Positions 5,416 through 59,043 of a stretch of 64,000 bases of DNA are shown here, one piece after another. The DNA lies in IMG/VR virus record IMGVR_UViG_3300049217_000071, positions 124,001 to 188,000 of that record; one strand, written 5' to 3'. Under the pieces are notes generated by a model, which ran no database searches, was not told the DNA's origin, and saw only the letters and a list, made by a program, of their open reading frames with translations. Numbering within the stretch: the first letter of the stretch is position 1; each line of letters opens with the position of its first letter. The position numbers were made by a program, and so were the translations under genes.

Positions 5416-6525
5416 ATGAGTCCTAATGCATTAAACCTACGGGAAATAGATCAAGAACAAGCTCTCAACCTAACCAAGTTTTTTATCCAATCACAACAGA
5501 ACATTTTCCTGTTTGGTAGACGTGGAGTTGGTAAGACAGACATTGCTATTCAAGCTGCCAAGGAATGTGGCTTGAAAATCAATTACATCAATCTAAGTGT
5601 TATTGAGCGTTCTGATATAGCGGGCTACCCTGATATACATGCCCCCGGCGACATCATCAATTATAAGTCCCCACACTTCTTACCCAAGCTGGCTCCTGAT
5701 GCCAAGCCAGATAGTGTTATCCTCTTCGATGAAATTGACAAGGTGATGCCTGAAGTAACGGCTCCCTTGTTAGAGATTCTGCTTTTCAAGAGAATCAATG
5801 GGCTCCCTATCAATGCAGCGGCTTGCATCTTGACTGGCAACCTGGCAAGTGAAGGCGCCTACTCCAACCAAATTAGTTCCGCTTTGTTGGATAGGGGCGC
5901 TAAGTATATTCTGACTTTCAATTTCGAGCGTTGGGTGGATTGGGCCAAAGCCAACAATGTGCATGATTTGATTTTAGGTTTTCTGCGTAGCGATCCCAGT
6001 TTTGCTTGTGGCGCATTAGAAGATACAGCTTTTGCTTCACCCTCTCCTCGCAGTTGGACGTGGGCCTCGCAAGCACTCATCAAAGCGAAGGAACTCAAGA
6101 TGCCCGATATAGAATCGGTCACCCAAATTATCTCCGGCTATGTCGGTTATGAGGCGGGCTTGAGGTTTCGAGTTTGGTATGAGCACTATCGCAGATTTGA
6201 GCCATACGTTCATTCGTTGATTGAACGTGGCGATATGTCTATCAATTTCAGTATGCTACATCCAACAGAGCAAGTTGTCTTCGTTGTATCAGCTTGTTAT
6301 TACGCGAAACAAAGGGTTTTGGGAGACAAATCTAAGAATAGATTCGTATATCTAGAGCGCTTATGTGACTTCTTCAATAACCATGGAGTGGACACGGAAG
6401 TTCAAGTGATGGGACTGTATAATTCCTTTGACTTTGAGATGATAAGGGCGCATAAACTATATACCTGTAAACCCTTTTTCGACCACTTTACCAAGCTCAG
6501 CGATAACGTCCATTTCAAGAAATGA
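5416..6525 (+). CDS. AAA+ ATPase (MoxR-like phage type)
   Basis: Walker A GRRGVGKT, Walker B ILFDE, ALLDR, SPSPRSW. Confidence 0.85.
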   Translation: MSPNALNLREIDQEQALNLTKFFIQSQQNIFLFGRRGVGKTDIAIQAAKECGLKINYINLSVIERSDIAGYPDIHAPGDIINYKSPHFLPKLAPDAKPDSVILFDEIDKVMPEVTAPLLEILLFKRINGLPINAAACILTGNLASEGAYSNQISSALLDRGAKYILTFNFERWVDWAKANNVHDLILGFLRSDPSFACGALEDTAFASPSPRSWTWASQALIKAKELKMPDIESVTQIISGYVGYEAGLRFRVWYEHYRRFEPYVHSLIERGDMSINFSMLHPTEQVVFVVSACYYAKQRVLGDKSKNRFVYLERLCDFFNNHGVDTEVQVMGLYNSFDFEMIRAHKLYTCKPFFDHFTKLSDNVHFKK

Positions 6526-8641: not shown

Positions 8642-8953
8642 ATGATGATTCTAGCCAAGCCAAAGAAGCCCGAGAAGATGATCACGGTCGATGGAATAGA
8701 GACATTCTACGATTGGGATCGCTACAACAAAAACATTCCTCTCGATGCTTTTTTGGTTTGGTGCAATGAAAAGACGCCCAAAGGCGCTACTGATGTTTCT
8801 ATCAGGGTTGATGAGTCTTGGGAGTATGATGATTGTATTGTTAGTTTGGAACTTCATTGGAAACAGGTGGTTCCAAACCCAGACTACGAACGTGCAATGA
8901 AGAAGTATGACACCAAACTAAAGAAGTGGAAAGCACAATGTCAGAAGTCGTAA
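8642..8953 (+). CDS. hypothetical protein
   Basis: 103-aa ORF. Confidence 0.65.
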   Translation: MMILAKPKKPEKMITVDGIETFYDWDRYNKNIPLDAFLVWCNEKTPKGATDVSIRVDESWEYDDCIVSLELHWKQVVPNPDYERAMKKYDTKLKKWKAQCQKS

Positions 8954-9873
8954 TGGTTCTGGGGCCTCCCGCCTCAGGTAAGAGCACGCTAACCAAAGAG
9001 CTGGCCAAGAAGGGCCACGTGGTTCTCAATCGCGACACTGAAGGTGGCAAGATTGTGGATTTGCTTCCTAAGATGGAAGCCCTCTTGAAAGACAAGAAGT
9101 CGGTCGTTCTTGACAACTTGTTTCCGACTGCCGAAGTTAGGAAGCCCTTTATCGAGATGGCTAAGAAGCATGATGTTTCCATTCACGCCATCGTCAAGAA
9201 GACCACCATCGAAGACGCTACTTTCAACTTCGTGCAAAGGGCCATCGGCATCTTGGGGACTTTTCCTGAGCCCGAGCTAATCAAGAAGAGCAAGCACCCC
9301 AATGTTTTTCCGCCTACCGTTCTCTTTAGGTATAAGAAGGAGTTTCAAGAGCCCACTACCGAGGAAGGTTTTGGTGTGGTTTCCAAGTCAGCCTTCGTTA
9401 GAGAAGATGATCCCAGTTTCACTAACAAGGCTCTCATCGTAGATTATGACGGCACCCTGCGTGAGTGCATCAATGGCAACGATAAGTATCCGGTCAGCAA
9501 AGACCAGATCGAGATGAAGGCCAACCGCAAAGAAGTGCTGCAAGCTTACAAGGACAAGGGATATATCTTGTTGGGATGCTCTAACCAAAGTGGCATTGCC
9601 AAGGGAGAATTGACGGCAGAAACAGCCAAAGAGCTATTCGATTTCACTAATCAGCAGTTGGGATTGGACATTGAGTATCGTTTCTGTCCTCATCAGTCAG
9701 CACCTATCTCTTGTTATTGCCGCAAGCCCCAAGTAGGAATTGGCGTAGAGTTTATGATCAAACACAAACTCAATCGTAAGGACACGATTTTTTGTGGTGA
9801 TATGAAAACTGACGAAACTTTCGCTAAGAGGTGCGGGTTTCAATACGTAGATCAGGCTGAATTTTTCAGATGA
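8938..9873 (+). CDS. polynucleotide kinase/3'-phosphatase, kinase plus HAD-IIIA
   Basis: GPPASGKST, LNRD, VLDN; IVDYDGTL, SNQSGI, CRKP, GDMKTD. Confidence 0.85.
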   Translation: MSEVVMVLGPPASGKSTLTKELAKKGHVVLNRDTEGGKIVDLLPKMEALLKDKKSVVLDNLFPTAEVRKPFIEMAKKHDVSIHAIVKKTTIEDATFNFVQRAIGILGTFPEPELIKKSKHPNVFPPTVLFRYKKEFQEPTTEEGFGVVSKSAFVREDDPSFTNKALIVDYDGTLRECINGNDKYPVSKDQIEMKANRKEVLQAYKDKGYILLGCSNQSGIAKGELTAETAKELFDFTNQQLGLDIEYRFCPHQSAPISCYCRKPQVGIGVEFMIKHKLNRKDTIFCGDMKTDETFAKRCGFQYVDQAEFFR

Positions 9874-11571: not shown

Positions 11572-12504
11572 ATGATCAAGGTAGAAATGTTAGTCGGAAT
11601 ACCAGGCTGTGGTAAGAGCACCTACGCTAAGCAGGTGATCGCTAAGGATCCCTCCAACTGGGTTCGAGTCAACAACGATGATTTGCGAGCTATGTTCAAT
11701 GGTTCGGTGTGGTCATCCGATTACGAGAAGATCGTAACGGATGCGCGCAACTACCTGATCCGAGATGCCCTCAAGCGTGGTAAGAACGTGATGATTGACA
11801 ACTTGAACTTGAACCGTCGTCATTTCGATGATGTGTGCAAGATTGCCAAGACGGTCAACGTGGACGTGCAAGTCTTCGAGAAGGCTTTCTATATCGAATT
11901 GGAAGAGGCCATGGAACGCAACGCCAAGCGTGAAGGTGCGGCTCGTGTGCCCGATGATGTTATCAAGAAGTGGTGGAAAGAGTCGGGTAAGCAACAGTTC
12001 AAGTTTTACAAGCCACGAGTAGAGATCTATCAGGAGCGTAAGGGCAACGTCAATCAACCGATGGATGGGCCGGCTCACGATCCTTCTTTGCCAACCGCTG
12101 TTCTATGCGACTTGGATGGAACCTTGGCTTTGATTCACAACAGAGGCCCTTACGATGCTTCTGACTGTGATGTCAAAGATCTACCAAACAAACCCGTGGT
12201 GTCATCCGTCAAGATGTATCACGATAGTGGGCACAAGATTGTTTTCTGTTCAGGCCGTGAGCAAAAATACGAACCTGAGACCAGACGTTTCATTGAAAAG
12301 CATTTGCCTGATGTTGTATATGAATTGTATATGCGTAAGACAGATGATTTCAGAAAAGACGCAATCATAAAAGAAGAAATCTATTGTGCCAATATTGAGG
12401 GCAAGTATAATGTGCTACTCGTGTTGGACGATCGCACGAGTGTCGTAGCTTTTTGGCGTGAAAAGGGCCTCACCTGCTTCCAGGTAGCTCCCGGCGATTT
12501 CTAA
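11572..12504 (+). CDS. pseT: T4 PseT-like polynucleotide 5'-kinase/3'-phosphatase
   Basis: GIPGCGKST, VNNDDLR; LCDLDGTL, SGR, LDDR, FQVAPGDF. Confidence 0.92.
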   Translation: MIKVEMLVGIPGCGKSTYAKQVIAKDPSNWVRVNNDDLRAMFNGSVWSSDYEKIVTDARNYLIRDALKRGKNVMIDNLNLNRRHFDDVCKIAKTVNVDVQVFEKAFYIELEEAMERNAKREGAARVPDDVIKKWWKESGKQQFKFYKPRVEIYQERKGNVNQPMDGPAHDPSLPTAVLCDLDGTLALIHNRGPYDASDCDVKDLPNKPVVSSVKMYHDSGHKIVFCSGREQKYEPETRRFIEKHLPDVVYELYMRKTDDFRKDAIIKEEIYCANIEGKYNVLLVLDDRTSVVAFWREKGLTCFQVAPGDF

Positions 12505-15145: not shown

Positions 15146-15571
15146 ATGAGTCGTTGGGTCAAAGAAACCGGCTTCTTGAATGAAGAGGGCGAAAAAGCTA
15201 TGCAAGGTTTCAAGATGGCTTTGGAGGAGCTTTTGAATCAACCGGAAGCTCAGGCTATGAGTGAAGGCGAACTGCGAACCCTTGGGTGTTGCTTACAGAA
15301 CATTGTGGGCAATACAATGTCTAACACTATCAGGGCAGCGAAACAAAATACTGGACCGCTCTTTAGTATGACAGACGAACAATTCGATAAGCATCTACAA
15401 GACAAATACGGGGCAGATTGGATGCTCAAGGCTTTGGAGCCTGATGAGATGAAACGAGCCTTGCTACAGACCTCGGTAGTTGATCTCTTGAAAGAAGTGT
15501 TCCAAAGCGAATACATTCACTTTCCACAACACGGAGTGCGTTTTCCGAAAGGAGGGCCAACATACAAATGA
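15146..15571 (+). CDS. hypothetical protein
   Basis: 141-aa ORF. Confidence 0.7.
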   Translation: MSRWVKETGFLNEEGEKAMQGFKMALEELLNQPEAQAMSEGELRTLGCCLQNIVGNTMSNTIRAAKQNTGPLFSMTDEQFDKHLQDKYGADWMLKALEPDEMKRALLQTSVVDLLKEVFQSEYIHFPQHGVRFPKGGPTYK

Positions 15572-16815
15572 AGAAGCTGTTAGTCCAGGAATACCTGGAA
15601 ACCAAGACGTTTGGGGATCTGGTGCGAGACCATGGAGTCTATGCATCATTTTCCAAGTCAGGTCATAAGTTCTCTTTGAACTATGATCAGATTGAAGCAA
15701 AGGAAGCTGATCCTTTGGCACAGGAGTGCCGCGGACTCATTTTGTCCGCTCATGGTCGTGCTTTCGATTTTCAAGCTAAGGAAATCAATGGTCGTTTGAA
15801 CTATGACCACATTTCCCCGGGCGAGACCTATATTCTGGCTTACCCAATGAAAAGATTCTTCAATCACGGACAAGGTTCGGCCGCTGCCATTGACTGGGCA
15901 GATCCTAAGCTGGCTGTTCTAGAAAAGTTGGATGGAACTCTCTGCATTGTGTATCACGATGAGTTTCTCAATCTATGGTGCGTGGCAACTCGCTCCGTGC
16001 CTGAGGCCGATTTGCTGATGGATAATGGACTCTTCACTTTCCGAACTTTGTTCGAGAAGGCAATGCAAGAAACTTGCAAATTCACTTTCAATGATCTGTC
16101 TTCCTACTTGGATAAGTCATATACCTACTGTTTCGAGCTAACGACCCCATACAATCGTATTGTGGTCTCTTATCCGAAGAATGGAATAACGTTGTTATCT
16201 GCTCGCAATCTCAAAACGTTGCAAGAAGAGGATCCGGCTGGTCTTGGATTGTCTACGGTAATTGGTATACCGGTTGTGCAGGCTCATACCTACACCACTT
16301 TGGATGAACTGCTGACTTGGGTGTCTTCCTTGAACCCAATGGAGCACGAAGGCGTGGTAGTCCGAGATGCTAACTTCAATCGCATCAAGGTCAAGAACGC
16401 TGCTTATGTGGCTTACAACAAAGTCCGTGATACCTTGGCGGCTTCCGAACGCAACTGCGTGGAATTGATTCTGGCGGAGAAGGACGATGATGTTGTTGCT
16501 TTTTTGCCAGAGGAGATCGTTAAGAATCTTCAGAAGATCAAGGCGGGGCTACAGGTAGCCATTAGGCAACACGATAATGCTTACCTGGCTGCGAAGGCGC
16601 AAGCTGACGCAACTCTACCTGGGGACAAGAAGACCTTTGCTATTCTGGTAACTCAGAACAAAGATCTGTGGACGGCCCCCTTCTTCAATATGTTCGATGG
16701 AAAGTCTGTCAATATGAAGGACTTCATTCAGAAGAACCGTAAGGATGGAACCTGGGGTAATTCCTTCCTGGACAAAATGTTGGAGATGTCCAAGCATTAT
16801 TCCACTGAAGCATAA
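15568..16815 (+). CDS. T4 Rnl1-like RNA ligase
   Basis: ECRGLIL, KRFFNHG, EKLDGT, CFELTTPYNRIVV, EGVVV, KVKNAAY. Confidence 0.9.
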   Translation: MKKLLVQEYLETKTFGDLVRDHGVYASFSKSGHKFSLNYDQIEAKEADPLAQECRGLILSAHGRAFDFQAKEINGRLNYDHISPGETYILAYPMKRFFNHGQGSAAAIDWADPKLAVLEKLDGTLCIVYHDEFLNLWCVATRSVPEADLLMDNGLFTFRTLFEKAMQETCKFTFNDLSSYLDKSYTYCFELTTPYNRIVVSYPKNGITLLSARNLKTLQEEDPAGLGLSTVIGIPVVQAHTYTTLDELLTWVSSLNPMEHEGVVVRDANFNRIKVKNAAYVAYNKVRDTLAASERNCVELILAEKDDDVVAFLPEEIVKNLQKIKAGLQVAIRQHDNAYLAAKAQADATLPGDKKTFAILVTQNKDLWTAPFFNMFDGKSVNMKDFIQKNRKDGTWGNSFLDKMLEMSKHYSTEA

Positions 16816-33252: not shown

Positions 33253-33326
33253 GCTTGCTTAGTATAACGGCATTATATCGCCCTTGTAACGCGATGAAGA
33301 GGGTTCGACTCCCTCCGCAAGCTCCA
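33253..33326 (+). tRNA. tRNA-Thr(UGU)
   Basis: Anticodon loop CTTGTAA, T arm GAGGG-TTCGACT-CCCTC, encoded CCA; C31-C39 mismatch. Confidence 0.88.
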
Positions 33327-33436
33327 ACCCTGTGGGCTCCCCTTTACTGGGGTCAAAGATGCTCAGGTAGTTTGATGTTCTCGCAAGAGAATTATGGTAA
33401 GGTGCTCAATCTAAACATCAAACGAGAGCACATTAG

Positions 33437-33511
33437 GCTGTTGTAGTTCAGTGGCAGAATTCCTCATTGGTAATGAGGCGGTCGTGGGTTCGATCCCCAC
33501 CAACAGCTCCA
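33437..33511 (+). tRNA. tRNA-Thr(GGU)
   Basis: Acceptor GCTGTTG/CAACAGC, CCTCA-TTGGTAA-TGAGG, encoded CCA. Confidence 0.93.
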
Positions 33512-33624
33512 GACTTTGCGTCTCAGGTTAGTGAAACTAACGTCGGCAGAACCCCCGACACAGTGTCCCGACAGTGGCAGTCAAATTGACGATAGATGGA
33601 TGACGGACAGTTGATACAAAGTAT

Positions 33625-33698
33625 GCTGATGTCATATAGTGGCATTATGTCGCCTTCGTAACGCGATCACGTGAGTTCGATTCTCACCTTCAGCTCCA
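33625..33698 (+). tRNA. tRNA-Thr(CGU)
   Basis: Loop TTCGTAA, T arm GTGAG-TTCGATT-CTCAC, encoded CCA; C31-C39 mismatch. Confidence 0.88.
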
Positions 33699-33737
33699 AG
33701 TCCAGTATCTCCCCCGATATTGGGCTTTTTTGTTTTT
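33699..33737 (+). terminator. intrinsic terminator-like hairpin
   Basis: AGTCCAGTATC / GATATTGGGCT stem followed by TTTTTGTTTTT. Confidence 0.6.
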
Positions 33738-33739
33738 AT

Positions 33740-34091
33740 GGGGATGACCTGGTTTCGACCGAGTAAAGACTTATCGAAATGATGCAGACAGAAGAGATTA
33801 CACTTCTCAAAGTAATCACATCTTAAATGCTGATGAATTTGCATTTGCTGAAGCGGCCTAAGAACCCTTCACATTCTTTAGATAAGACTGCTTGAGTAAT
33901 CTAAAGCGTGTAAACCTACAAAGCTGGTTATTGAGTAGGGCTACGATATTCAATAATGAGACCACAGTAGATATCCCGTCAAAGAGAATATTTGACAGCG
34001 TTGTCAATGACGCTAATATTGACTATGTCTGTGAATGATTTTCGATGATGGCGTATTTGGGACTGCGGTTCGATTCCGCACATCTCCACCA
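33740..34091 (+). ncRNA. ssrA: tmRNA; tag peptide (A)ADEFAFAEAA at 33829-33861
   Basis: 5' GGGGATGACCTGGTTTCGAC, 3' GGTTCGATTCC...CATCTCCACCA, G3-U70 pair, TTAAAT resume context, ORF ending AA-stop. Confidence 0.93.
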
Positions 34092-37749: not shown

Positions 37750-37822
37750 GGTCCTATAACTCAAAGGCAGAGATTCGTCTCTAAAACGAAGGGTGCGGTT
37801 TCGAGATCCGCTAGGACCGCCA
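37750..37822 (+). tRNA. amber suppressor tRNA (CUA anticodon), copy 1
   Basis: Acceptor GGTCCTA/TAGGACC, G73, CCA; TTCGT-CTCTAAA-ACGAA arm; T loop TTCGAGA. Confidence 0.87.
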
Positions 37823-39288: not shown

Positions 39289-39361
39289 GCGCCATTAGCT
39301 CAGTTGATAGAGCGGTCGACTCTAAAACGAACGGTCGTGGGTTTGAGTCCCACATGGCGCA
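39289..39361 (+). tRNA. amber suppressor tRNA (CUA anticodon), copy 2; weak anticodon stem, no encoded CCA
   Basis: Acceptor GCGCCAT/ATGGCGC, D stem GCTC/GAGC, loop CTCTAAA, T arm GTGGG-TTTGAGT-CCCAC. Confidence 0.75.
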
Positions 39362-39389
39362 CTAAAACTACTAAAATGATATACTCAAC

Positions 39390-47105: not shown

Positions 47106-47503
47106 TTACTCTCATACAAATTCGTTCGGGAGAACTTCATTTAGTTGACTATATGTCGAATGATGGTACACGTCATAGAACCAAATGTGGTAAGATATAC
47201 ACGACTTCCCAGCTTATCAACACGCTGGACTTGGATAGCCCGATCGCTGTGGTTTGTCAACGCTGCTATGAGGTTGCTGAGGAGAATTTGGTCTATGATA
47301 GAAACAAATACCCACAGAGCGCTAAAGGCGAATTATACGAGCATCTTTGCAGGAATTACAAACATATCCAAATGAAGGCAAGAGATACAGAGACCTTCTA
47401 TTCCCCCATTACAAATGATAGGTTTGTGCAAGCGGTATGTAATTATCAGAAGCTTTTAGAGAAGCATAAGAGCCATAAATTATGGAAGTGGTATGCTCGA
47501 TAA
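47102..47503 (+). CDS. hypothetical Zn-binding protein
   Basis: H...TKCG...CQRC. Confidence 0.6.
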   Translation: MITLIQIRSGELHLVDYMSNDGTRHRTKCGKIYTTSQLINTLDLDSPIAVVCQRCYEVAEENLVYDRNKYPQSAKGELYEHLCRNYKHIQMKARDTETFYSPITNDRFVQAVCNYQKLLEKHKSHKLWKWYAR

Positions 47504-47819
47504 CATTAGCAAACGAGACTTATGGCATTATGTCAATCGCAAGATCAAGAGATTGATACATCACTACCATATTTTCAGCATCATCAGTATTTTATTTGAT
47601 GAGATGACCAGGGATTTACGAGATGGTAAGGAGATCAAAATCACCAATTTGGGAACTCTGGTCTTGAAAACAATGCCGCCCAGGAAGTATCACGATGTTA
47701 GATTCCATAAAGTAATGGAGTCCCCAGGACATCGAGTATTGCGATTATTTTTAGCTCGCCCCATCCGCAAAAAATTATGTGATTCGCTCGACCTTGACAG
47801 CAAATTGAAGGATGACTAA
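47493..47819 (+). CDS. HU/IHF family DNA-binding protein
   Basis: ISKRDL, LFDEMTRDLRDGKEIKITNLGTL, PPRKY. Confidence 0.75.
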   Translation: MLDNISKRDLWHYVNRKIKRLIHHYHIFSIISILFDEMTRDLRDGKEIKITNLGTLVLKTMPPRKYHDVRFHKVMESPGHRVLRLFLARPIRKKLCDSLDLDSKLKDD

Positions 47820-48202: not shown

Positions 48203-48553
48203 ATGAACAAAGCGTTTTTACTGAAAGTGAAAAATATTCTCCTAAGCGAAAAAGATGCTATAATGAAGCAGACCAAACGTGATGTCGATATAGACACCGA
48301 TGGAGATGAAACAGATGAAATTCAGGCCGGTATTCTGATTGACATAAACAACCAGCTTACCACTCGCAACTCGGAAAAGCTGGTGCAGATAGCAGAAGCT
48401 CTTCATCGAGTAGACAACAAAACCTATGGGTTATGTTTAGACTGCGGTGAGATGATTCCTGAAAAGAGATTATTGATCAATCCGTATTTTCAGACTTGTA
48501 TTTCTTGTGCCGAAGAGCGCGAAGCCGAAGTCAAACAGCGAAAGAGAGCCTAA
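48203..48553 (+). CDS. dksA: DksA/TraR C4 zinc-finger protein
   Basis: DETDE tip; IAEALHRV...TYGLCLDCGEMIPEKRLLINPYFQTCISC. Confidence 0.88.
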   Translation: MNKAFLLKVKNILLSEKDAIMKQTKRDVDIDTDGDETDEIQAGILIDINNQLTTRNSEKLVQIAEALHRVDNKTYGLCLDCGEMIPEKRLLINPYFQTCISCAEEREAEVKQRKRA

Positions 48554-48554
48554 A

Positions 48555-49142
48555 TTGAATACACTAGTTTTAGAGCAGACCGAAAACGGTGAAGTGCCGA
48601 TGGATGTGTATCAGAAGCTTGCTAATGATCGCATTCTTTTTATTACCGACTATATTGATGATCGTATTGCAACAGACATCATTGCCACGTTGCTACTCAA
48701 AGATCAGGGCGAGGACAGCGATAAAAAGATAACCATCTTCATCAACTCTCATGGCGGTGATGTTCGTAATGCCTTTATGGTTTATGACATCATGCAAATG
48801 ATCCACGCCCCCATCGAAACGGTGTGTATTGGCGCTGCAATGGATGAAGCCGCCCTACTGTTAGCTGGCGGCACCAAAGGGATGCGATTGGCTACCAGGA
48901 ACGCTGTGATTACAGTAAGTCAGTTAGTCCACGACTGGCATATGCATACTAATTTGACGGATGCTAAAAATCTGTTGGAACAATCCCAGATCGATAATGC
49001 TCGTATCTTGGAGATTTATTCTAAGGCCACTGGCAAGAGCGTCAAAGAGTTGAAAGAAGATTTAGATCGACGTATCTTTCTAGATGCTCCCCAAGCAGTG
49101 AAGTATGGTTTGATTGACAAGGTAGTTTCTACCAATAAGTAA
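48555..49142 (+). CDS. catalytically inactive ClpP homologue (ClpR-like)
   Basis: TTG start; DRILF, FINSHGG; CIGAAMDEAA (Ser to Asp) and ITVSQL (His to Ser). Confidence 0.85.
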   Translation: MNTLVLEQTENGEVPMDVYQKLANDRILFITDYIDDRIATDIIATLLLKDQGEDSDKKITIFINSHGGDVRNAFMVYDIMQMIHAPIETVCIGAAMDEAALLLAGGTKGMRLATRNAVITVSQLVHDWHMHTNLTDAKNLLEQSQIDNARILEIYSKATGKSVKELKEDLDRRIFLDAPQAVKYGLIDKVVSTNK

Positions 49143-49150
49143 GGTGAATT

Positions 49151-49750
49151 ATGGGTAAAAAAGAAAAGAAGGATAGTCAGGAATACGATCCGTTTCACCA
49201 GCTATTGATGTTGGGATACGCCGAATCTTATGTCAAGATGTCCAAAAGTCGCGCCATTTTTCTCTCCGAAGACATTACCCAAAGAGTGGGGGCGGAGTTA
49301 TCGGCTATGATGCTCTATTACGATAATATGGATCACGAGTTGCCTATTCATTTGTATATTCATTCCAATGGCGGGGATGTTTCTGGTCTGGCTAACATTT
49401 ATGATGTGATGCAAATGGTCCATGCCCCTGTGGAAACTATCCTACTGGGTAAGTGCTATTCGGCCGGAGCGGTCATCCTGGCGGCTGGTAGCGCCGGCAA
49501 ACGTTATGCTTTGCGCAGTTCCAAGGTCATGATTCACGGTATTCAGTTTGCTTTCCCTATCCCAGGCGATGATATGACTAGCAATAAGAACTACCTGAAG
49601 TTCATTGACGAAAACAACGATAACATAATGAAAATGCTAGCTCACCACACCAAACAGCCTTTGGACAAGATCAAAGCTGACTGCACCCGAGAGTTGTGGA
49701 TGGATGCCAAAAAGGCTAAAGAATACGGTATTATCGATCATATCCTCTAA
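49151..49750 (+). CDS. clpP: ClpP protease subunit, catalytic residues intact
   Basis: YIHSNGG, LGKCYSAGA, KVMIHG, WMDAKKAKEYGIID. Confidence 0.9.
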   Translation: MGKKEKKDSQEYDPFHQLLMLGYAESYVKMSKSRAIFLSEDITQRVGAELSAMMLYYDNMDHELPIHLYIHSNGGDVSGLANIYDVMQMVHAPVETILLGKCYSAGAVILAAGSAGKRYALRSSKVMIHGIQFAFPIPGDDMTSNKNYLKFIDENNDNIMKMLAHHTKQPLDKIKADCTRELWMDAKKAKEYGIIDHIL

Positions 49751-49786: not shown

Positions 49787-51223
49787 ATGGAAAAGACTGC
49801 TAGAAAACCATCTGCCGATCCCGTCCAAGAGAAATTGAGACAAAACAAAGCGACCTGGAACAAGGACGTTTCTGTTTTCATCAATGATCTCATTCATCTC
49901 AAAAAGACGATGAACGGCTGGCCGTCTAAGTTTTTCAAGGAGCGCTCTCGTATTGTGGAGCCTATGCCGGCTGATCCGGCTACCATCATCGGTTCTTTGG
50001 CCGGCGATTTCCAAGAGATAACCAATCGCGGTAATGCTTTGGTGCAAGAGCAGCTCAACTATTCCCAGAACCGTCGTAAGAGACAACCAAAGCAACTCAA
50101 CCTGCCTTTAGGGCAACCTGCTACGCCAGCCACCCCAGCTAAGCCAGAAGAAGCTCCTAAAGTAGATTTGACCAAGCAACTTTCTTTGCCAGCCGTGGCT
50201 GCTTTGGAATCAGAGTTGGTCAAGGTGGCTTTTGCTTTGGAAGAGAAGTATGCTTTGGAAACCGAAGCTTCTAATCCGTTGACTCGTTTTTACACCAGAC
50301 TCAAGACGCCCACCATCGGTTTTGGTGAAGGTGCTCGTGTGCGTCAGTTGCGAATGACGATGCTGAAGGGTTGCGTGCAAACTCTTCGAGAACTCAAGAA
50401 GCTACAAAAAGAAATTGTCAAGTCATCTAAGATCAGCACCAAGTCTTCTCACAACATTATGTCAGCCTTGGCTAAGCAGTGGTCAGCCGTCTTGACCAAT
50501 TTCAAGCCATACTATGACGAGAAGGCAAAGTCAATTCCTACCGATGAACCAGTTGAACAAGTGGCCCCAGAAGATGCTCAGGTCCCAGAAGGAGAAGTAG
50601 ATGAAGATTTTCCGCTATACAAAATGGATAGGGCCAAGTTCATCATTTCTGATCTGAAGAATAACAGGGCCAATTTCGGTAGTTTTATACCTAAAGAGTT
50701 AGACGCCATCATCGACAAAATCAATGCTATTCCAGCAGCTAAGAAGGTGGATTTCGTTCTGCGCTCTAACATAGAAGAAGTGTATAACCAAGCCCTGGTA
50801 GCCCTCAATGGCAGGCTGGGCACTACTGGAAACTCTCTCAAAGAGATTGCTGTGCAACTTCGTAAGGCTAAGAGTCTGCCGGCCGTTGCCCCAACTCCGG
50901 CACCTTCTCCAGTGGCGGTAGAACCGCCTGCACCAGAGGCTTTAGAGACTCAGGCACAAGCTATGCGATGGTTAGGTAAAGCCAGACATGGCCTTTTGCC
51001 GGGTAGCACTTCTGGTCGTAGGTTGGAAATTTATCGTAAGATCGGAGAGCTAAAAGTAGAACTCAACAAGATAATGAACCTACTAGAGAAGGGCCTAGAT
51101 CTTCCTGAGTTATATGCCGCCATTATTCCTTTTGATAGGGGCGTGATGTCGCTAAGAAAGATGGTCAGGTCATTGTATACTTCCGAGTATCCTAATGAAG
51201 CTGTGCCGATGCCGTTCTTCTAA
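49787..51223 (+). CDS. hypothetical protein with Pro/Ala linkers, possibly virion-associated
   Basis: 478-aa ORF. Confidence 0.75.
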   Translation: MEKTARKPSADPVQEKLRQNKATWNKDVSVFINDLIHLKKTMNGWPSKFFKERSRIVEPMPADPATIIGSLAGDFQEITNRGNALVQEQLNYSQNRRKRQPKQLNLPLGQPATPATPAKPEEAPKVDLTKQLSLPAVAALESELVKVAFALEEKYALETEASNPLTRFYTRLKTPTIGFGEGARVRQLRMTMLKGCVQTLRELKKLQKEIVKSSKISTKSSHNIMSALAKQWSAVLTNFKPYYDEKAKSIPTDEPVEQVAPEDAQVPEGEVDEDFPLYKMDRAKFIISDLKNNRANFGSFIPKELDAIIDKINAIPAAKKVDFVLRSNIEEVYNQALVALNGRLGTTGNSLKEIAVQLRKAKSLPAVAPTPAPSPVAVEPPAPEALETQAQAMRWLGKARHGLLPGSTSGRRLEIYRKIGELKVELNKIMNLLEKGLDLPELYAAIIPFDRGVMSLRKMVRSLYTSEYPNEAVPMPFF

Positions 51224-51231
51224 AAGGAAAT

Positions 51232-51639
51232 ATGGAATCAGGATACGTCTACATTCACAACAATGTTTTTCCTACGCTGCTAGCTATTTCAGAAGAGGAG
51301 CAAGGTCGTGGGCTAATGGGTCAAAAATGGCCGCCTCCCGTAATGGCATTTGTGTATCCGCAACCTAAGGTCAATAAGTTTTGGATGAAGAATACGCCAA
51401 GTCCTTTGGATATTGTCTTCTGTCATCAAGGTAAGGTCTCTCAGATCTGCTATGGTGAACCACATTCTACTGCGGCTATTGGCGACAATGTCTTTAGTGA
51501 TTTGATTATTGAGCTGCCACATGGCACAGTTGATTCTAGCGGGATTAGGCTTGGACATTCGGTAGGCTTAGTAAGTCCTACGCAAGATGAGCTGCGCCAG
51601 ATCATTGCTGAAAAATACCACGATTTCGTAAAATTCTGA
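51232..51639 (+). CDS. DUF192 family protein
   Basis: EQGRGLM, FWMKNTPSPLDIVF, IELPHG. Confidence 0.85.
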   Translation: MESGYVYIHNNVFPTLLAISEEEQGRGLMGQKWPPPVMAFVYPQPKVNKFWMKNTPSPLDIVFCHQGKVSQICYGEPHSTAAIGDNVFSDLIIELPHGTVDSSGIRLGHSVGLVSPTQDELRQIIAEKYHDFVKF

Positions 51640-51699: not shown

Positions 51700-52689
51700 A
51701 TGGATACCGTTCAACAGTTCAACAAGATTCTCGATTCCTTCAAGATTCGAGCGATCTGTCTGTCGTCCAACCAAATCGATAACTACACTTTTTACGATCT
51801 TCGCCTAGAGCCCAATGTCAAGGTGAAGGAAATTGATAGGTATAGCGATGAGATTTCGTTGGCTATGCACGCCCCGTGTAAACCGATTATCAAAGTTTTG
51901 CACGAACAAGGAATAGTGCGTATGGAGTTTGCTACTCCTCGTATAGAGCCACTTCGACTGTTTGATCTGTTTACCAATAAGAAGGTGCCGACCGGAGACC
52001 TTGTTTGTCTTCTGGGTCAGACTATAGATGGTCAGAAGGTATGGATGGACCTGATGCAGAATCCGCATATGATTGTGGCAGGCACCACCGGATCTGGTAA
52101 GAGCACGCTGCTCAATAACATTGTGGCTAATGTGCTCAACTACAACGATGCCGATATTTTTTTGGTGGATCCTAAGCGGATCGAGTTCTCGGAATATGAG
52201 AAGCATATCAAAGCTATTGAGGTGTATTACACCTTCAGCGATGCGTTGGAACTAGTTTCTAATATGGTAGAGGTGATGGAGGAAAGGTATAACAGAATTA
52301 GATCTGGCGCCGACCCTCGTGAACTGAAGCCAATTCTCATTGTGGTAGATGAGTTTGCTGATTTGATTATGCAGGATAAGGGCGATCTTTTCTATACACA
52401 GGTTTGTAGGTTGGCGCAGAAATGTCGCGCTGCCAAAATCTCTATGGTTTTAGGCACGCAAAGACCGTCTGTCAACATCATCAATGGCACTATCAAGGCT
52501 AACTTTCCTGCCCGCATTGCTTGCCGTGTAGCCAGCCACGTGGATTCTAAAGTGATTCTAGATGCTTCTGGCGCTGAGAATTTACTGGGTAAGGGCGATG
52601 CTTTGTTGCGAGATAACTATCGCTATCTAGAACGTTTTCAAGTGGCATATACGGACGCAGCAGAAGTATGCAGTGTGTTCGGAGCATAA
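51700..52689 (+). CDS. FtsK/SpoIIIE motor-domain protein (no TM or gamma domain)
   Basis: PHMIVAGTTGSGKS, DPKRIE, VVDEFADL, GTQRPS, GAENLLGKGD. Confidence 0.92.
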   Translation: MDTVQQFNKILDSFKIRAICLSSNQIDNYTFYDLRLEPNVKVKEIDRYSDEISLAMHAPCKPIIKVLHEQGIVRMEFATPRIEPLRLFDLFTNKKVPTGDLVCLLGQTIDGQKVWMDLMQNPHMIVAGTTGSGKSTLLNNIVANVLNYNDADIFLVDPKRIEFSEYEKHIKAIEVYYTFSDALELVSNMVEVMEERYNRIRSGADPRELKPILIVVDEFADLIMQDKGDLFYTQVCRLAQKCRAAKISMVLGTQRPSVNIINGTIKANFPARIACRVASHVDSKVILDASGAENLLGKGDALLRDNYRYLERFQVAYTDAAEVCSVFGA

Positions 52690-55901: not shown

Positions 55902-57706
55902 AGACATTAGTAATTGTGGAGTCCCCAGCTAAGGCTGGCAAGATTCAAGGATTTCTTGGCAAAGATTATACGGTAATGGCCAGTGTGGGCCATATTGCCG
56001 ACTTAGCTAAAGGTGGTCGATTCGGTCTAGGCATTGATATTGAGAATGACTTCAAGCCACACTATGTTTTGATGGAAGACAAGATTGCCATTGTAGATGA
56101 TCTTCTCAAGGCGGCTAAAAAGGTAGATCGTATTCTAATTGCAAGCGACCCTGATCGTGAGGGCGAGGCTATCGCCTGGCATTTGTCCAAACGATTAGAA
56201 GATACGGGCAAGCCAATCAAGAGGGTGGTTTTCGGAGAAATCAAGAAGTCAGTGGTTCAGAAGGCTATTCAGAACCCACGAGATGTGGATCTCAACCTCT
56301 TTCATTCCCAAGAAGCTCGTCGTTTGTTAGATCGTTTGGTAGGCTTTATGGCCTCTCCGTTTCTAATGAACTGTATCGGCCCCAAACTATCAGCCGGCCG
56401 TGTGCAATCGGTGGTGACTCGTATGGTCATTGACCGCGAACGAGAGATTGAGGTTTTCGTTCCAGAAGAGTTTTGGACTATTCAGGTCAGTTTGACCAAG
56501 GATAGCAAGCAAGGCTTTATGACCAAGTATTCGGGCCGTCCTGTGGATGCTACCAGTGCCGAGGCTATGCGAGCTAAATTGGCCGCTCCTGGCGCTGAAT
56601 ACATTATCTCCGAGGTCAACTCCGACCCAGAGAGCAAGTACCCTCAGGCCCCGCTGGTAACTTCTACACTTCAGCGCATTATGTCCAAGGAACACGGAAT
56701 GAGCGCTGATCAGACGATGAAGGCAGCTCAGGGTTTGTATGAAGCTGGTTATTGCACTTACATCAGAACAGACTCCGTTCGAGTAGGTGAAGAAGCTTTG
56801 GTGGAAGTTCGTCAATGGCTAACCGATAACAAGTATCAGCTTCCTAAGAAGGCCCTGACTTACAAGAACAAAGATGCGGCTCAGGATGCTCACGAATGTA
56901 TTCGTCCTTCTGATCTATCTCTCCTCCCTGGTAGCAATTACGCTATCATTGATCCCAATGAGAAATTGGTCTATGAGACCATTTGGAAGCATTTCGTAGC
57001 CAGCCAGATGTTGCCGGCCGTTTACGATACACTAAGGATTACCGCGCATGTCAAAGGTGATAAATCAGCCGAAGTCAAGGCTTCGGGTAAAGCTCTCAAG
57101 AGCAAAGGCTTCTTGGAAATCTTGGGCGTTTCTGACGAAAGCAAAATTGAAATTCCATCAGAGCTTGTTATGGGAGACATTTTGCTTCCTTTCGGAAGAT
57201 CTCCTGTTAGAATGGAAAAGAAACAAACTCAGCCGCCACCCCGATATTCGGAAGACAAACTCATCAAAGAACTAGATGCTAGGAACATTGGCCGTCCAGC
57301 CACTTATGCTGAATTGCTGAGTAAGATTACTCTCCGCAATTATGTGGAAAAGAGAGGTAGTGTCTTCCACGCCACTGATTTGGGTAAGAAGATTACTGAT
57401 GAACTTTTGCAGTTCTTTACCTTTATGGATTATGATTACACCGCCAAGATGGAAAAGCAACTCGATGAAATCGAGGGTGGTAAAGTAAATCACGTGGATA
57501 TGCTGAAAAAGTTTTATCCAGATTTCAAGAAGGAAATCGACAAGGCATATCTACAACACGGTGCTACGATGTGCTCAAAATGCGGAAGCCCAATGTCAGT
57601 TCGCACTACCAAAGGTGGCGATAAGTTTCTCGGATGCTCCGCCTATCCTAAGTGCAAAAGCACCATCAATCTCGGATCCTCACCCGCTACAGCTCACGTT
57701 GCCTAA
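55898..57706 (+). CDS. topA: type IA DNA topoisomerase
   Basis: LVIVESPAK, ASDPDREGE, SAGRVQS, CTYIRTD (catalytic Tyr), GRPATYA, C-terminal Zn ribbon. Confidence 0.96.
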   Translation: MKTLVIVESPAKAGKIQGFLGKDYTVMASVGHIADLAKGGRFGLGIDIENDFKPHYVLMEDKIAIVDDLLKAAKKVDRILIASDPDREGEAIAWHLSKRLEDTGKPIKRVVFGEIKKSVVQKAIQNPRDVDLNLFHSQEARRLLDRLVGFMASPFLMNCIGPKLSAGRVQSVVTRMVIDREREIEVFVPEEFWTIQVSLTKDSKQGFMTKYSGRPVDATSAEAMRAKLAAPGAEYIISEVNSDPESKYPQAPLVTSTLQRIMSKEHGMSADQTMKAAQGLYEAGYCTYIRTDSVRVGEEALVEVRQWLTDNKYQLPKKALTYKNKDAAQDAHECIRPSDLSLLPGSNYAIIDPNEKLVYETIWKHFVASQMLPAVYDTLRITAHVKGDKSAEVKASGKALKSKGFLEILGVSDESKIEIPSELVMGDILLPFGRSPVRMEKKQTQPPPRYSEDKLIKELDARNIGRPATYAELLSKITLRNYVEKRGSVFHATDLGKKITDELLQFFTFMDYDYTAKMEKQLDEIEGGKVNHVDMLKKFYPDFKKEIDKAYLQHGATMCSKCGSPMSVRTTKGGDKFLGCSAYPKCKSTINLGSSPATAHVA

Positions 57707-57729
57707 TTGAAAGAACGAGTTATTATCGC

Positions 57730-59043
57730 ATGAAAACCAGTTCCGCCCCGCAAAAGTATCTGGCTCCCCAGGATTTGGAGAACCAAGAGAACTTGTCTTT
57801 GCAGCGACTAAAGAGCCTAGTTCCGGCCCTTTCCGATAACGATGTTGATGATCGCCCTTGCGCCAATTTCATTGATCTAATGAATTGGGTATCCGCTAAT
57901 TTTAGCGCGTATCTTACTGACACTACTAACCTGAGTAAGTTTGTTCATAATCGTGTTATTGTGGATGGGCAGTTTCTAGAGTTTTGTGAAGAGAATAAAG
58001 TCAGCATAGACTGTCTTTACAGAGATTCCATCGTTTCTTGGAAGACCGATAACGATTTTGAGAAGTTCTTTGCTCAAGGCGTTTTCCTCATCAAGACCAA
58101 AGGTGTTGAGTTTCTTCACGCCGCTTTGTTCCACAAGGGCAATCAGAACGAAGATGAAATCAGTTTTTTCATTGTGTGTTCAGAAAACAATTATGAAGGC
58201 TACCGCAAACTGCGTAATGAGTTTGACGAGTGGGTGCAAGAAAGAGATCGTAGCAATCTTCACATTCGTGTGGTAGAAGGCGAAGACCTTCCTTATACCA
58301 AAGATAGCACCTGGGAAGAGTTGTTTCTTCCCAAGGACATCAAGTCCGAAATCAAGGGCTTGGTAGAAAACTTCCTATCTTCTAAGGATTTCTACTTGGA
58401 AAACCGCATTCCTTGGAAGCGCGGTATTTTGTTATATGGCAAGCCGGGCAACGGTAAGACCTCCATTATCCGCACCATTATGTCGGCTTACAACTTCAAG
58501 CCCGTCACCATCGTAGCTGGTGCCAACGATGAGGCTGTGCGAGAGGCTTTTACTTATGCGGAAGATCAAAGCCCTGCCCTACTTTACTTTGAGGATTTGG
58601 ATTCTCTTTTAGAGAAGAGTGTAGATATCTCTTCCTTCCTCAATTTGATGGACGGTATCTCGGCTAAAAATGGATTGTTGGTTATTGCTACTGCCAATGA
58701 TGTCAAAAAGCTAAAAACCAATATTACGGAGAGGCCCTCTCGATTTGACAGAAAATTTGAGATTCCTCCTCCAAATGCAGAAATGGCTTATATATATCTA
58801 AAGAGATGGTTTGGTAATCTCATCACCCTCAAGAAGTGTCGAGAACTTGCCAAATATGCTTCTAAATACGAATTTTCTTATGCTTATCTGAAAGAACTGT
58901 ATATTTCTGCTATGTTTGAGGCTTTGGCTCATAACCGTAAGGCTCCCACGGAAAAGGATGTACAGCACGCTCTCAACCGACTAGTCAAGGATAAAAACCT
59001 CTTGAATGGCGGCACGGTCAATATGGACAAGTATTTCAAGTGA
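57730..59043 (+). CDS. AAA+ ATPase
   Basis: GKPGNGKT, YFEDLD, ATAND, RPSRFDRK. Confidence 0.88.
   Translation: MKTSSAPQKYLAPQDLENQENLSLQRLKSLVPALSDNDVDDRPCANFIDLMNWVSANFSAYLTDTTNLSKFVHNRVIVDGQFLEFCEENKVSIDCLYRDSIVSWKTDNDFEKFFAQGVFLIKTKGVEFLHAALFHKGNQNEDEISFFIVCSENNYEGYRKLRNEFDEWVQERDRSNLHIRVVEGEDLPYTKDSTWEELFLPKDIKSEIKGLVENFLSSKDFYLENRIPWKRGILLYGKPGNGKTSIIRTIMSAYNFKPVTIVAGANDEAVREAFTYAEDQSPALLYFEDLDSLLEKSVDISSFLNLMDGISAKNGLLVIATANDVKKLKTNITERPSRFDRKFEIPPPNAEMAYIYLKRWFGNLITLKKCRELAKYASKYEFSYAYLKELYISAMFEALAHNRKAPTEKDVQHALNRLVKDKNLLNGGTVNMDKYFK

What the first reader, a model, noticed from the sequence alone, without database searches (positions are those of the whole stretch)
48555..49750. 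Tandem inactive and active ClpP genes: a viral ClpR/ClpP-like protease
The first copy has Asp at the nucleophile Ser (GAAMDE versus GQAASM) and Ser at the catalytic His (TVSQ versus MIHQ). The second keeps both (CYSAG, MIHG). Mixed ClpP/ClpR cores are established in cyanobacteria and plastids; I do not know of one described in a phage. It could be a private protease for tmRNA-tagged or motif-tagged substrates, or poison or retarget host ClpP.
Basis: partly seen in the sequence, partly recalled or inferred. Interest (0 to 1): 0.65.

Follow-up and report, generated by a model that had tools for sequence, protein, structure and literature searches.

The report
Inactive plus active ClpP pair in huge phages
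A lineage of very large phages carries two adjacent ClpP protease genes, one with all three catalytic residues lost and one with them kept; both are tightly conserved, so they most likely build one mixed protease core, a phage counterpart of the ClpP/ClpR cores of cyanobacteria and plastids that arose separately.

Summary
Gene c1 (48555-49142, TTG start) and gene c2 (49151-49750) are both full-length ClpP homologues (PF00574, about 158 bits each). c1 has lost all three catalytic residues: Ser to Asp, His to Ser, Asp to Arg. c2 keeps Ser and His and has Glu at the acid position.

The window lies in a 268-kb phage record. The tandem pair is present in all 27 related loci examined, with contigs up to about 490 kb. 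c1 is not a pseudogene: its dN/dS is 0.02 and its dN equals that of c2.

c1-type proteins form a large clade of their own, in which none of about 160 sequences has the triad. This clade is unrelated to plant ClpR. Sister phage lineages carry one active, canonical ClpP in the same gene module. The pair therefore looks like a duplication with complementary losses: c1 keeps the canonical N-terminal hairpin and c2 keeps the active site.

Best reading: the two proteins form one obligate mixed ClpP core that host unfoldases drive, since the phages encode no ClpX or ClpA. Physical assembly was not shown; the complex prediction gave no verdict. A phage tmRNA lies 15 kb upstream.

Verdict: a new variant of a known kind.

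The parts
48555..49142 (+). c1: catalytically dead ClpP paralogue, 195 aa, TTG start. The triad positions hold Asp97, Ser122 and Arg173. The canonical ClpP N-terminal hairpin and the handle helix are retained.
   Evidence: Pfam 158.2 bits. PDB alignment. Family triad census. AF2 model at pLDDT 93.5 with strands 4-9 and 12-17 and helix 134-159. Foldseek TM 0.94 to solved ClpPs. dN/dS 0.021.
49143..49150 (+). 8-nt spacer between c1 and c2, containing a GGTGA ribosome-binding motif. In relatives the two genes are separated by about 0-15 nt or overlap.
   Evidence: Sequence. Gene coordinates in relatives.
49151..49750 (+). c2: ClpP paralogue with the active site retained, 199 aa: Ser104, His129, Glu181. 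Its first ~25 residues do not align to the canonical ClpP N-terminus.
   Evidence: Pfam 158.6 bits. PDB alignments start only at c2 residue 24-27. NCBIfam alignments start at model position 21-24, against 6-11 for c1. Ser and His are invariant in 121 sequences, and the acid residue is Glu in 91 and Asp in 30. dN/dS 0.024.
48203..48553 (+). DksA/TraR-type zinc-finger protein. It lies immediately upstream of the clpP gene or genes in every related locus examined; the genes are linked, but its role is unknown.
   Evidence: PF01258 47 bits and phrog_54. Synteny.
49787..51223 (+). Conserved downstream ORF 'X', 478 aa here and 333-833 aa in relatives. It has a conserved N-terminal region, a variable middle, and no recognisable family. 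It also follows the single clpP in sister lineages.
   Evidence: No Pfam or PHROG hit. Atlas search gave nothing usable. Homologous N-termini in L013, L034 and L050.
51232..51639 (+). DUF192 protein, a conserved member of the same gene module.
   Evidence: PF02643 59.5 bits. Synteny.
51700..52689 (+). FtsK/SpoIIIE-type ATPase, a conserved member of the same gene module.
   Evidence: PF01580 101.7 bits. Synteny.
47493..47819 (+). HU-like DNA-binding protein, a conserved upstream member of the module.
   Evidence: PF00216 30.6 bits. Synteny.
33740..34091 (+). Phage tmRNA with predicted tag ADEFAFAEAA. It may be functionally linked to the pair (a supply of tagged substrates), but the only evidence is co-occurrence.
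   Evidence: ARAGORN. Rfam RF00023 113.7 bits, E 1.6e-44. A tmRNA lies 11-14 kb upstream of the ClpP pair in the 6 related records that have one; here it is 15 kb upstream. Other tags end in MAA and QAA.

Best explanation
c1 and c2 are the two subunits of one phage-encoded, ClpP-type proteolytic core.

Origin. An ancestral phage ClpP sat in a module of dksA-like gene, clpP, ORF X, DUF192 and an FtsK-like ATPase. It was duplicated, and the two copies then lost complementary features. c1 lost all three catalytic residues but kept the full ClpP fold, including the canonical N-terminal axial hairpin. c2 kept Ser-His-Asp/Glu but has a divergent N-terminus.

Inferred working. The two proteins co-assemble, either as a dead c1 heptamer stacked on a catalytic c2 heptamer or as mixed rings. 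The c1 face presents the canonical axial loops to an AAA+ unfoldase, and substrates are cut at the c2 sites. These phages encode no ClpX, ClpA or ClpC-type partner, so the unfoldase is most likely the host's. The core would then give the phage its own degradation chamber for host unfoldases to drive. Possible substrates include proteins tagged by the phage's own tmRNA.

What is shown: the sequence features, the fold of c1, the conservation of the pair, the purifying selection and the evolutionary pattern.

What is inferred: co-assembly, ring architecture, the unfoldase partner and the substrates.
For: 1. Both genes are genuine full-length ClpP homologues.

2. c1 lacks the triad, and so does every c1-type protein seen. 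Among the 120 closest orthologues none has S/H/D. The same holds for about 37 c1-type representatives among the best 150 (clusters at 50% identity) in a search of 1.84 billion proteins. In those, the residues at the three sites vary freely, so no alternative catalytic set is conserved.

3. c2-type proteins always keep Ser and His, with Asp or Glu as the acid.

4. The pairing looks obligate. The order c1 then c2, adjacent or overlapping, was found in 18 of 18 IMG/VR loci, in L034 and L035, next to 4 distant c1 representatives at 39-49% identity, and next to 2 distant c2 representatives. There are exactly two PF00574 genes in each of 7 related genomes.

5. Constraint is equal and strong. dN/dS is 0.021 for c1 and 0.024 for c2 against the closest relative. 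Mean dN is 0.262 against 0.277 over 185 pairs.

6. The retained features are complementary. c1 aligns to ClpP from the very N-terminus (S. aureus residue 6; NCBIfam model position 6-11). Its AF2 model has the hairpin and the handle (pLDDT 93.5), and its best structural matches are ClpP2 chains of the M. tuberculosis ClpP1P2 complex (TM 0.94). c2 aligns only from about residue 25.

7. Sister lineages keep an undivided form. Three basal active ClpPs (P0279, P0318, P0313) are single genes behind a dksA-like gene, one of them followed by a clear homologue of X. They have both the triad and a canonical N-terminus.

8. In the trees c1 (100/100) and c2 (99/87) are each one clade. Both join the same unresolved node together with the phage single ClpPs.

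9. No Clp unfoldase or adaptor was found. ClpX (TIGR00382) and ClpB_D2-small gave no hit in 8 related records, three of them 92-100% complete, and ClpS gave none in this record.

10. There is precedent for a division of labour between ClpP rings. In Streptomyces ClpP1P2 one ring cuts and only the other binds the ATPases (PMC9765437). [quoted passage not shown] ClpP/ClpR cores are reviewed in PMC7966870.
Against: - No direct evidence of assembly. The one complex prediction gave no verdict, and no 7+7 model could be run.
- The residues of the hydrophobic docking pocket are at least as canonical in c2 (Tyr69, Tyr119, Leu121) as in c1 (Phe62, Leu112, Thr114). This mapping relies on my own recollection of the E. 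coli pocket residues. Which face binds the unfoldase therefore stays open.
- The trees do not resolve c1 and c2 as sisters.
- The host, and therefore its Clp ATPases, is unknown.
- One near-complete relative (G006, 92% complete) has the pair but no tmRNA, so the tmRNA link is not obligatory.
- No expression data could be obtained.
Confidence: 0.6

Rival explanations
1. c1 acts on the host rather than on c2. It would be a dominant-negative ClpP mimic that co-assembles with, or caps, host ClpP. Alternatively it soaks up host ClpX/ClpA through its canonical N-terminal face, shutting down or diverting host Clp proteolysis. c2 would work separately.
For: c1 keeps the canonical ClpP N-terminus and fold, and is as similar to cellular ClpPs (34-39% identity) as to c2 (29%). 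The phages encode no Clp ATPase of their own. Phage proteins are known targets of host ClpXP, for example lambda O as cited in PMC6102473.
Against: The strict adjacency and often overlapping reading frames of c1 and c2 over a very wide divergence, and the complementary loss pattern, are what is expected of subunits of one complex. A host-directed decoy would be expected to track host ClpP, and so to evolve faster and more erratically than c2, but dN is equal. The two readings are not mutually exclusive.
Confidence: 0.12
2. The two genes are independent. c2 is a stand-alone phage ClpP, and c1 has taken on a non-proteolytic role of its own, such as a chaperone-like or scaffold ring or a regulator, without entering a complex with c2.
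For: Solved ClpR and ClpP of the apicoplast form separate homo-heptamers that have been hard to catch together (PMC7966870). The residues at the dead site of c1 vary freely, so c1 needs no defined pocket.
Against: This reading does not explain why c2 lost the canonical N-terminus exactly in the lineages that have c1, while single-copy relatives keep it. It also does not explain why neither gene was found without the other in the 27 related loci examined.
Confidence: 0.15
3. The pair is the head-maturation (prohead) protease of these phages, a ClpP-family S14 protease that acts inside the procapsid.
For: The best PHROG matches carry the label 'head maturation protease' (phrog_94, 65 and 88 bits). 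A RefSeq record names a jumbo-phage ClpP that way (H25). No S77 or S78 prohead protease was detected in 8 related genomes.
Against: - Both proteins score far higher on cellular ClpP models (148-166 bits) than on the ClpP-related head-maturation model NF045542 (52 and 63 bits, cut-off 120).
- They lie in a module of DNA-binding and ATPase genes, 56 kb from the terminase and 58 kb from the portal.
- A separate candidate head-maturation protease domain sits in the morphogenesis region (phrog_18299, E 1.8e-11).
- The missing S77/S78 hits carry little weight, because Pfam also fails to find the capsid protein in complete relatives.
Confidence: 0.08
4. c1 is a decaying pseudogene left over from a tandem duplication.
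For: All three catalytic residues are lost.
Against: The frame is intact in every relative. dN/dS is 0.02-0.2 and equal to that of c2. The clade has persisted down to 39% identity and is always of full length. The predicted fold is confident.
Confidence: 0.01

Closest known systems
ClpP/ClpR hetero-oligomeric cores of cyanobacteria (ClpP3/R), plant plastids (P-ring/R-ring) and apicoplasts (PMC7966870)
   Same: An inactive ClpP paralogue without the catalytic triad and without a propeptide is encoded together with, and presumably working with, an active ClpP. The inactive copy is conserved and essential-looking rather than decaying.
   Different: The origin is independent. c1 forms its own clade with phage ClpPs and is far from plant ClpR2 in the trees. 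The pair is encoded by a virus. The dedicated unfoldases and adaptors of those systems (ClpC, ClpS, ClpT) were not found here. Stoichiometry and ring composition are unknown here.
Asymmetric ClpP1P2 heterotetradecamers of Streptomyces and Mycobacterium tuberculosis (PMC9765437, PMC4416901)
   Same: Two ClpP paralogues lie in one operon, with labour divided between the rings. In Streptomyces, ClpP1 supplies proteolysis and only ClpP2 binds ClpX/ClpC. The best structural matches of the c1 model are ClpP2 chains of the M. tuberculosis ClpP1P2 complex.
   Different: From my own knowledge of these systems, both paralogues there keep the catalytic triad. Here the putative docking subunit has lost all three residues, so the division of labour would be complete and irreversible. 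Binding of any ATPase was not tested here.
Single ClpP genes (with or without ClpX/ClpA/ClpS) of jumbo phages, e.g. phage G ClpXP and Atu_ph07 (PMC7824862, PMC12484599, PMC6102473)
   Same: A phage-encoded, cellular-type ClpP that is thought to act on host or phage proteins rather than in head maturation. Sister lineages of the present phages carry exactly such a single active ClpP in the same module.
   Different: Here the gene is split into a dead and a live paralogue, and no phage unfoldase accompanies it. No c1-type protein is present in the GenBank phage collection searched; the best match is 39% identical and is a generic ClpP.
ClpP-related phage head-maturation proteases (NCBIfam NF045542, phrog_94)
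   Same: The same superfamily (MEROPS S14 / ClpP-crotonase fold), encoded by a phage.
   Different: Scores are below that family's cut-off, the genes are not in the morphogenesis module, and the full tetradecamer-type architecture (N-terminal hairpin, handle) is retained.

Membership tests
ClpP (Pfam PF00574, MEROPS S14) | Sequence match to the family model above the curated cut-off, over the full length | tested here: met
   c1 scores 158.2 bits and c2 158.6 bits against a cut-off of 20.2, covering model positions 3-181 and 8-179 of 182. Solved ClpPs match at E 1e-30 to 1e-35.
ClpP (Pfam PF00574, MEROPS S14) | ClpP fold with N-terminal axial hairpin and handle helix | tested here: met
   For c1: AF2 pLDDT 93.5, strands 4-9 and 12-17, helix 134-159; Foldseek TM 0.94, rmsd 1.3 over 192 residues. 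Its sequence aligns from residue ~25 to the end, and its N-terminus does not align.
ClpP (Pfam PF00574, MEROPS S14) | Ser-His-Asp catalytic triad | tested here: not met
   c1 has Asp97, Ser122 and Arg173, so it is a family member by descent and fold but not an enzyme. c2 has Ser104, His129 and Glu181. Within the c2 family the acid is Asp in 30 and Glu in 91 of 121 sequences. Activity with Glu was not tested.
ClpP (Pfam PF00574, MEROPS S14) | NCBIfam subfamily or equivalog cut-offs for cellular ClpP | tested here: not met
   The best model, NF001368, gives 166.4 bits (c1) and 148.5 bits (c2) against a cut-off of 249. TIGR00493 gives 140 and 124 bits against 308.6. Both proteins are divergent phage forms.
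ClpP (Pfam PF00574, MEROPS S14) | Assembly into a double-heptamer barrel and coupling to an AAA+ unfoldase | not testable with these tools
   The pairwise complex prediction gave no verdict. The host unfoldase is unknown.
ClpR (inactive ClpP paralogue of cyanobacteria, plastids, apicoplasts) | ClpP homologue that lacks the catalytic triad and has no propeptide | tested here: met
   c1 lacks all three residues. It starts at the position where a solved ClpP starts (c1 residue 4 aligns with residue 6 of the solved chain).
ClpR (inactive ClpP paralogue of cyanobacteria, plastids, apicoplasts) | Descent from the cyanobacterial/plastid ClpR lineage | tested here: not met
   Plant ClpR2 (P0387, named) nests among presumed cellular ClpPs. 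c1 is a separate clade with 98 and 100/100 support. Cyanobacterial ClpR itself was not in the sample.
ClpR (inactive ClpP paralogue of cyanobacteria, plastids, apicoplasts) | Forms a hetero-oligomeric core with active ClpP | tested here: inconclusive
   Only indirect evidence: strict gene pairing, equal constraint and complementary features. The prediction gave no verdict.
ClpP-related phage head-maturation protease (NF045542; phrog_94) | Score over the family cut-off | tested here: not met
   51.9 bits (c1) and 63.4 bits (c2) against a cut-off of 120. The PHROG matches of 65 and 88 bits are weaker than the matches to cellular ClpP.
ClpP-related phage head-maturation protease (NF045542; phrog_94) | Location in the head morphogenesis module (portal, scaffold, capsid) | tested here: not met
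   The terminase lies at G000 229,951-231,828 and the portal at 232,007-233,824, whereas the ClpP pair is at 172,555-173,750. In 6 relatives the terminase lies about 50-52 kb downstream of the pair.
Asymmetric ClpP1P2 (Actinobacteria and others) | Two co-encoded ClpP paralogues, both with catalytic triads, forming one homo-heptamer ring each | tested here: not met
   Co-encoding is met. c1 lacks the triad. Ring composition is not testable here.

The most novel reading that the evidence does not exclude
A large lineage of huge phages has independently evolved a fully split ClpP machine. A dead 'docking and gating' ring (c1) captures host Clp unfoldases, and a live ring (c2) does all the cutting. 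This core works with the phage's own tmRNA, whose tags end in the unusual EAA, MAA or QAA. Together they would form a phage-private pathway for ribosome rescue and degradation, or a way to retarget host proteolysis during infection.
Probability: 0.2. Interest if true: 0.75.

Novelty: new variant of a known kind. Interest (0 to 1): 0.55.

Why it matters
Mixed cores of active and inactive ClpP subunits have so far been described only for cyanobacteria and their organelle descendants. Why a chambered protease should keep dead subunits is still an open question.

This system is an independent, virus-encoded case of the same solution. It comes with its own evolutionary control: sister phages have one undivided, active ClpP in the same gene module. 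That makes the question testable with two small soluble proteins. One can ask what the dead ring contributes (unfoldase docking, gating, or activation of the live ring) and compare the result with the single-gene form.

The finding also points to proteolysis as a core function of this group of ~400-500 kb phages rather than an accessory one, and possibly as a function tied to their tmRNA. Finally, it would add a viral way of using host AAA+ unfoldases.

Tried and rejected
- **Complex prediction of c1 with c2.** It gave no verdict (score 0.07, mark 0.32). It is not used as evidence either way.
- **First AF2 model of c1.** It came from a 16-row alignment and reached only pLDDT 51.8, so it was discarded. 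A 109-row alignment then gave pLDDT 93.5.
- **The look-up of sequencing runs.** No expression data or read mapping were obtained, and read laying was not used.
- **blastn of the locus against GenBank phages.** No match. A tblastn search found only generic ClpPs at 39% identity or less. The double hit in the 636-kb record LR756504 is not this module.
- **Promoter and terminator scan.** Counts were at chance level and no operon boundaries could be defined.
- **ORF X.** No Pfam or PHROG family, and the Atlas search gave nothing usable. Its C-terminal PFF is conserved only in close relatives, so I dropped the idea that it is a ClpP-docking motif.
- **Phage AAA+ proteins as private unfoldases.**
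  - The 369-aa protein at 5416-6525 has only a borderline ClpA-D2/ClpB-like match (26.6 bits). It has no ClpB_D2-small domain, and its LGF tripeptide sits in a helix-like context.
  - The 463-aa protein at 57652-59043 belongs to the classical AAA clade (YjoB/VCP/PAN-like). To my knowledge that clade is not known to dock on ClpP.
  - Neither protein is excluded as a partner, but neither is supported.
- **Pfam capsid families and S77/S78 proteases.** No hits even in complete relatives, so these absences say little.
- **SmpB.** Not found in this 62%-complete record.
- **Genetic code.** Only table 11 was used.
Full report
**1. What is there**

The window is bases 124,001-188,000 of a 268,344-bp IMG/VR virus record, estimated 62% complete. 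Two same-strand ORFs lie at the reported place.

- c1 has a long GTG frame from 48507, but that frame overlaps the upstream gene. The TTG at 48555, one base after the upstream stop, gives an N-terminus MNTLV… This is the N-terminus of the whole orthologue family, whose members are mostly 194-196 aa. c1 is therefore 48555-49142, 195 aa.
- c2 is 49151-49750, 199 aa. It starts 8 nt after the c1 stop, behind a GGTGA motif.

Both match Pfam CLP_protease over almost the whole model, at 158 bits each against a cut-off of 20.2. Both match dozens of solved ClpPs at E 1e-30 to 1e-35. They are 29% identical to each other, about as far apart as either is from cellular ClpPs.

**2. Catalytic residues**

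In the alignment to a solved ClpP, c1 has Asp at the nucleophile Ser, Ser at the His, and also Arg at the catalytic Asp. All three triad residues are gone.

c2 has Ser104 and His129, with Glu181 at the acid position. Among the 120 closest c2 orthologues plus c2 itself, Ser and His are invariant, and the acid is Glu in 91 and Asp in 30.

Among the 120 closest c1 orthologues none has Ser/His/Asp. The commonest pattern is Asp-Ser/Thr-Arg.

**3. c1 is not a pseudogene**

Against the closest relative with DNA available (L034, 95% identical protein), dN/dS is 0.021 for c1 and 0.024 for c2. Over 185 pairs of loci the mean dN is 0.262 for c1 and 0.277 for c2, with r = 0.84. Every pair with usable dS gives a ratio of 0.22 or less. 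The dead copy is as constrained as the live one.

**4. The pair is a conserved feature of a large phage lineage**

- All 18 related IMG/VR loci carry c1 followed directly by c2. Their contigs reach 481 kb and CheckV completeness reaches 100%. c1 is 58-76% identical and c2 53-74% identical to the window's copies.
- Each of 7 related genomes has exactly two PF00574 genes.
- A profile search of 1.84 billion representative proteins put about 37 c1-type representatives, clustered at 50% identity, among the best 150. None of them has the triad. The residues at the three sites vary freely (GSI, NGI, FSK, DNR, GSG and others), so no replacement catalytic set is conserved.
- Four of these distant c1 proteins (39-49% identity) and two distant c2 proteins were traced to their contigs. 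All sit in the same module: HU-like, dksA-like, c1, c2, a large variable ORF X, DUF192, an FtsK-like ATPase, and then topoisomerase IA. c1 and c2 are adjacent or overlapping.

**5. Origin**

A quick tree of 156 sequences makes the dead proteins one clade (SH-aLRT 98) and c2-type proteins another (97). A careful tree of 60 sequences gives 100/100 and 99/87. Both clades join one unresolved node together with a set of active ClpPs from similar contigs.

Three of those basal active ClpPs were traced. Each is a single clpP gene directly behind a dksA-like gene. In L050 it is followed by a clear homologue of ORF X. Each has both the triad and a canonical ClpP N-terminus.

Plant chloroplast ClpR2, the only named inactive ClpP in the sample, lies far away among presumed cellular ClpPs. 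I labelled that group 'cellular' from its canonical motifs; only this one member carries a name.

The simplest history is that a phage ClpP was duplicated in place and the two copies degenerated in complementary ways. The trees are unrooted and do not resolve c1 and c2 as sisters, so this remains an inference.

**6. Complementary features**

c1 aligns to ClpP from its first residues: residue 6 of a solved ClpP and model positions 6-11 of the NCBIfam ClpP models. With a deep alignment its AF2 model is confident (pLDDT 93.5, pTM 0.87). The model shows the N-terminal β-hairpin (strands 4-9 and 12-17) and the long handle helix (134-159). Foldseek superposes it on solved ClpPs over 192 of 195 residues (TM 0.94, rmsd 1.3 Å), and ClpP2 chains of the M. 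tuberculosis ClpP1P2 complex rank first.

c2 aligns only from about residue 25. Its N-terminal segment is not conserved across the c2 clade, whereas the c1-clade consensus follows the canonical N-terminal consensus.

[quoted passage not shown] The pocket residues, as I recall them for E. coli, are partly kept in both copies. It therefore remains open which face docks an unfoldase.

**7. Partners**

ClpX (TIGR00382) and the ClpB_D2-small domain gave no hit in this record or in 7 relatives, three of them 92-100% complete. ClpS gave none in this record. A host unfoldase is thus the likeliest motor.

Two phage AAA+ proteins in the window are weak alternatives. One is at 5416-6525, with a borderline ClpA-D2/ClpB-like match. 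The other is at 57652-59043 and is YjoB/VCP/PAN-like.

**8. The tmRNA link**

The window holds a full-length tmRNA at 33740-34091 (Rfam 113.7 bits, E 1.6e-44; predicted tag ADEFAFAEAA). Seven of the 8 related records have a tmRNA. In the relatives it lies 11-14 kb upstream of the ClpP pair. Two further tags end in MAA and QAA. tmRNAs in huge phages are known (PMC7162821).

However, one 92%-complete relative has the pair without a tmRNA, and no SmpB was found in this record.

**9. Is it the prohead protease?**

Probably not.

- The proteins score two to three times higher on cellular ClpP models than on the ClpP-related head-maturation model, where they fall below its cut-off.
- They sit among DNA-binding and ATPase genes.
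- The large terminase and the portal lie 56-58 kb downstream.
- A 1,229-aa protein in that region has a stretch matching a 'head maturation protease' PHROG (E 1.8e-11).

The lack of S77/S78 hits says little, because Pfam also misses the capsid protein in complete relatives.

**10. Comparison with what is known**

In function, the closest analogues are two.

- The ClpP/ClpR cores of cyanobacteria, plastids and apicoplasts (PMC7966870).
- The asymmetric ClpP1P2 cores, above all that of Streptomyces, where one ring cuts and only the other binds the ATPases (PMC9765437).

By descent, c1 belongs to neither. It is a phage-specific dead branch of ClpP.

ClpP genes in jumbo phages are known (PMC7824862, PMC12484599, PMC6102473). 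I found no description of a dead/live pair in a phage in the library available. The phrases 'phage ClpP', 'phage-encoded ClpP' and 'viral ClpP' occur in none of its papers. The GenBank phage collection holds no c1-type protein. That library covers only open-access papers and preprints, so the novelty claim is limited to that extent.

**11. Limits**

- Physical assembly was not shown. The complex prediction gave no verdict, and c2 was not modelled.
- The host is unknown.

**12. Verdict**

The ClpR/ClpP-like interpretation is the best-supported reading, at about 0.6. I rate it a new variant of a known kind, of moderate to good interest.

Noticed in passing
window 33253-34091: A cluster of three tRNA-Thr genes (anticodons TGT, GGT, CGT) is directly followed by a full-length tmRNA with predicted tag ADEFAFAEAA. 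The same arrangement of tRNA-Thr genes followed by a tmRNA recurs in related phage genomes. Other tags, where ARAGORN reported one, are ANDNAFAMAA and ANDNAFVPMAQAA.
   Followed up: partly
window 37750-37822 and 39289-39362: ARAGORN calls two tRNAs with anticodon CTA as 'tRNA-Pyl'. These are candidate amber-suppressor tRNAs. Only the second reached the Rfam tRNA threshold. The ORFs of the window read well under table 11, and I did not test for TAG recoding.
   Followed up: no
window 3050-4201, 8926-9873, 11572-12504, 15568-16815: A set of RNA-repair-type genes: a nucleotidyltransferase (phrog_388), polynucleotide kinase homologues (phrog_505) and an RNA ligase (phrog_562). Together they look like a tRNA repair module. 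A Thg1-like gene occurs near the module in distant relatives (L037, L038).
   Followed up: no
window 57652-59043: A 463-aa classical-clade AAA ATPase directly after topoisomerase IA. Its best solved relatives are B. subtilis YjoB, VCP-like ATPase and PAN (E about 1e-31). It could be an unfoldase, but nothing links it to the ClpP pair.
   Followed up: partly
window 49787-51223: ORF X has conserved N- and C-terminal parts and a Pro/Ala-rich variable middle. Its length ranges from 333 to 833 aa among relatives. It always follows the clpP gene or genes, also in the single-ClpP lineages. No family, fold or look-alike was found.
   Followed up: partly
L050:4001-4636, L051:4001-4642, L052:2038-2817: Sister phage lineages carry one active ClpP with a canonical N-terminus in the same dksA-like to clpP module. 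They are natural 'undivided' controls for the c1/c2 pair.
   Followed up: yes
G000:C1:239149-242838 (L057:7150-10839), outside the window: A 1,229-aa protein in the morphogenesis region, near the terminase and portal, has residues 119-213 matching phrog_18299 'head maturation protease' (E 1.8e-11). It has no Pfam hit. It is a candidate true prohead protease, fused to a large unknown part.
   Followed up: partly
related virus records G003, G004, G005: IMG/VR classes three relatives as 'provirus', although they are 267-481 kb and syntenic with records classed as linear phage. Either these huge phages can integrate or the label is an artefact. Host flanks, if real, would identify the host.
   Followed up: no
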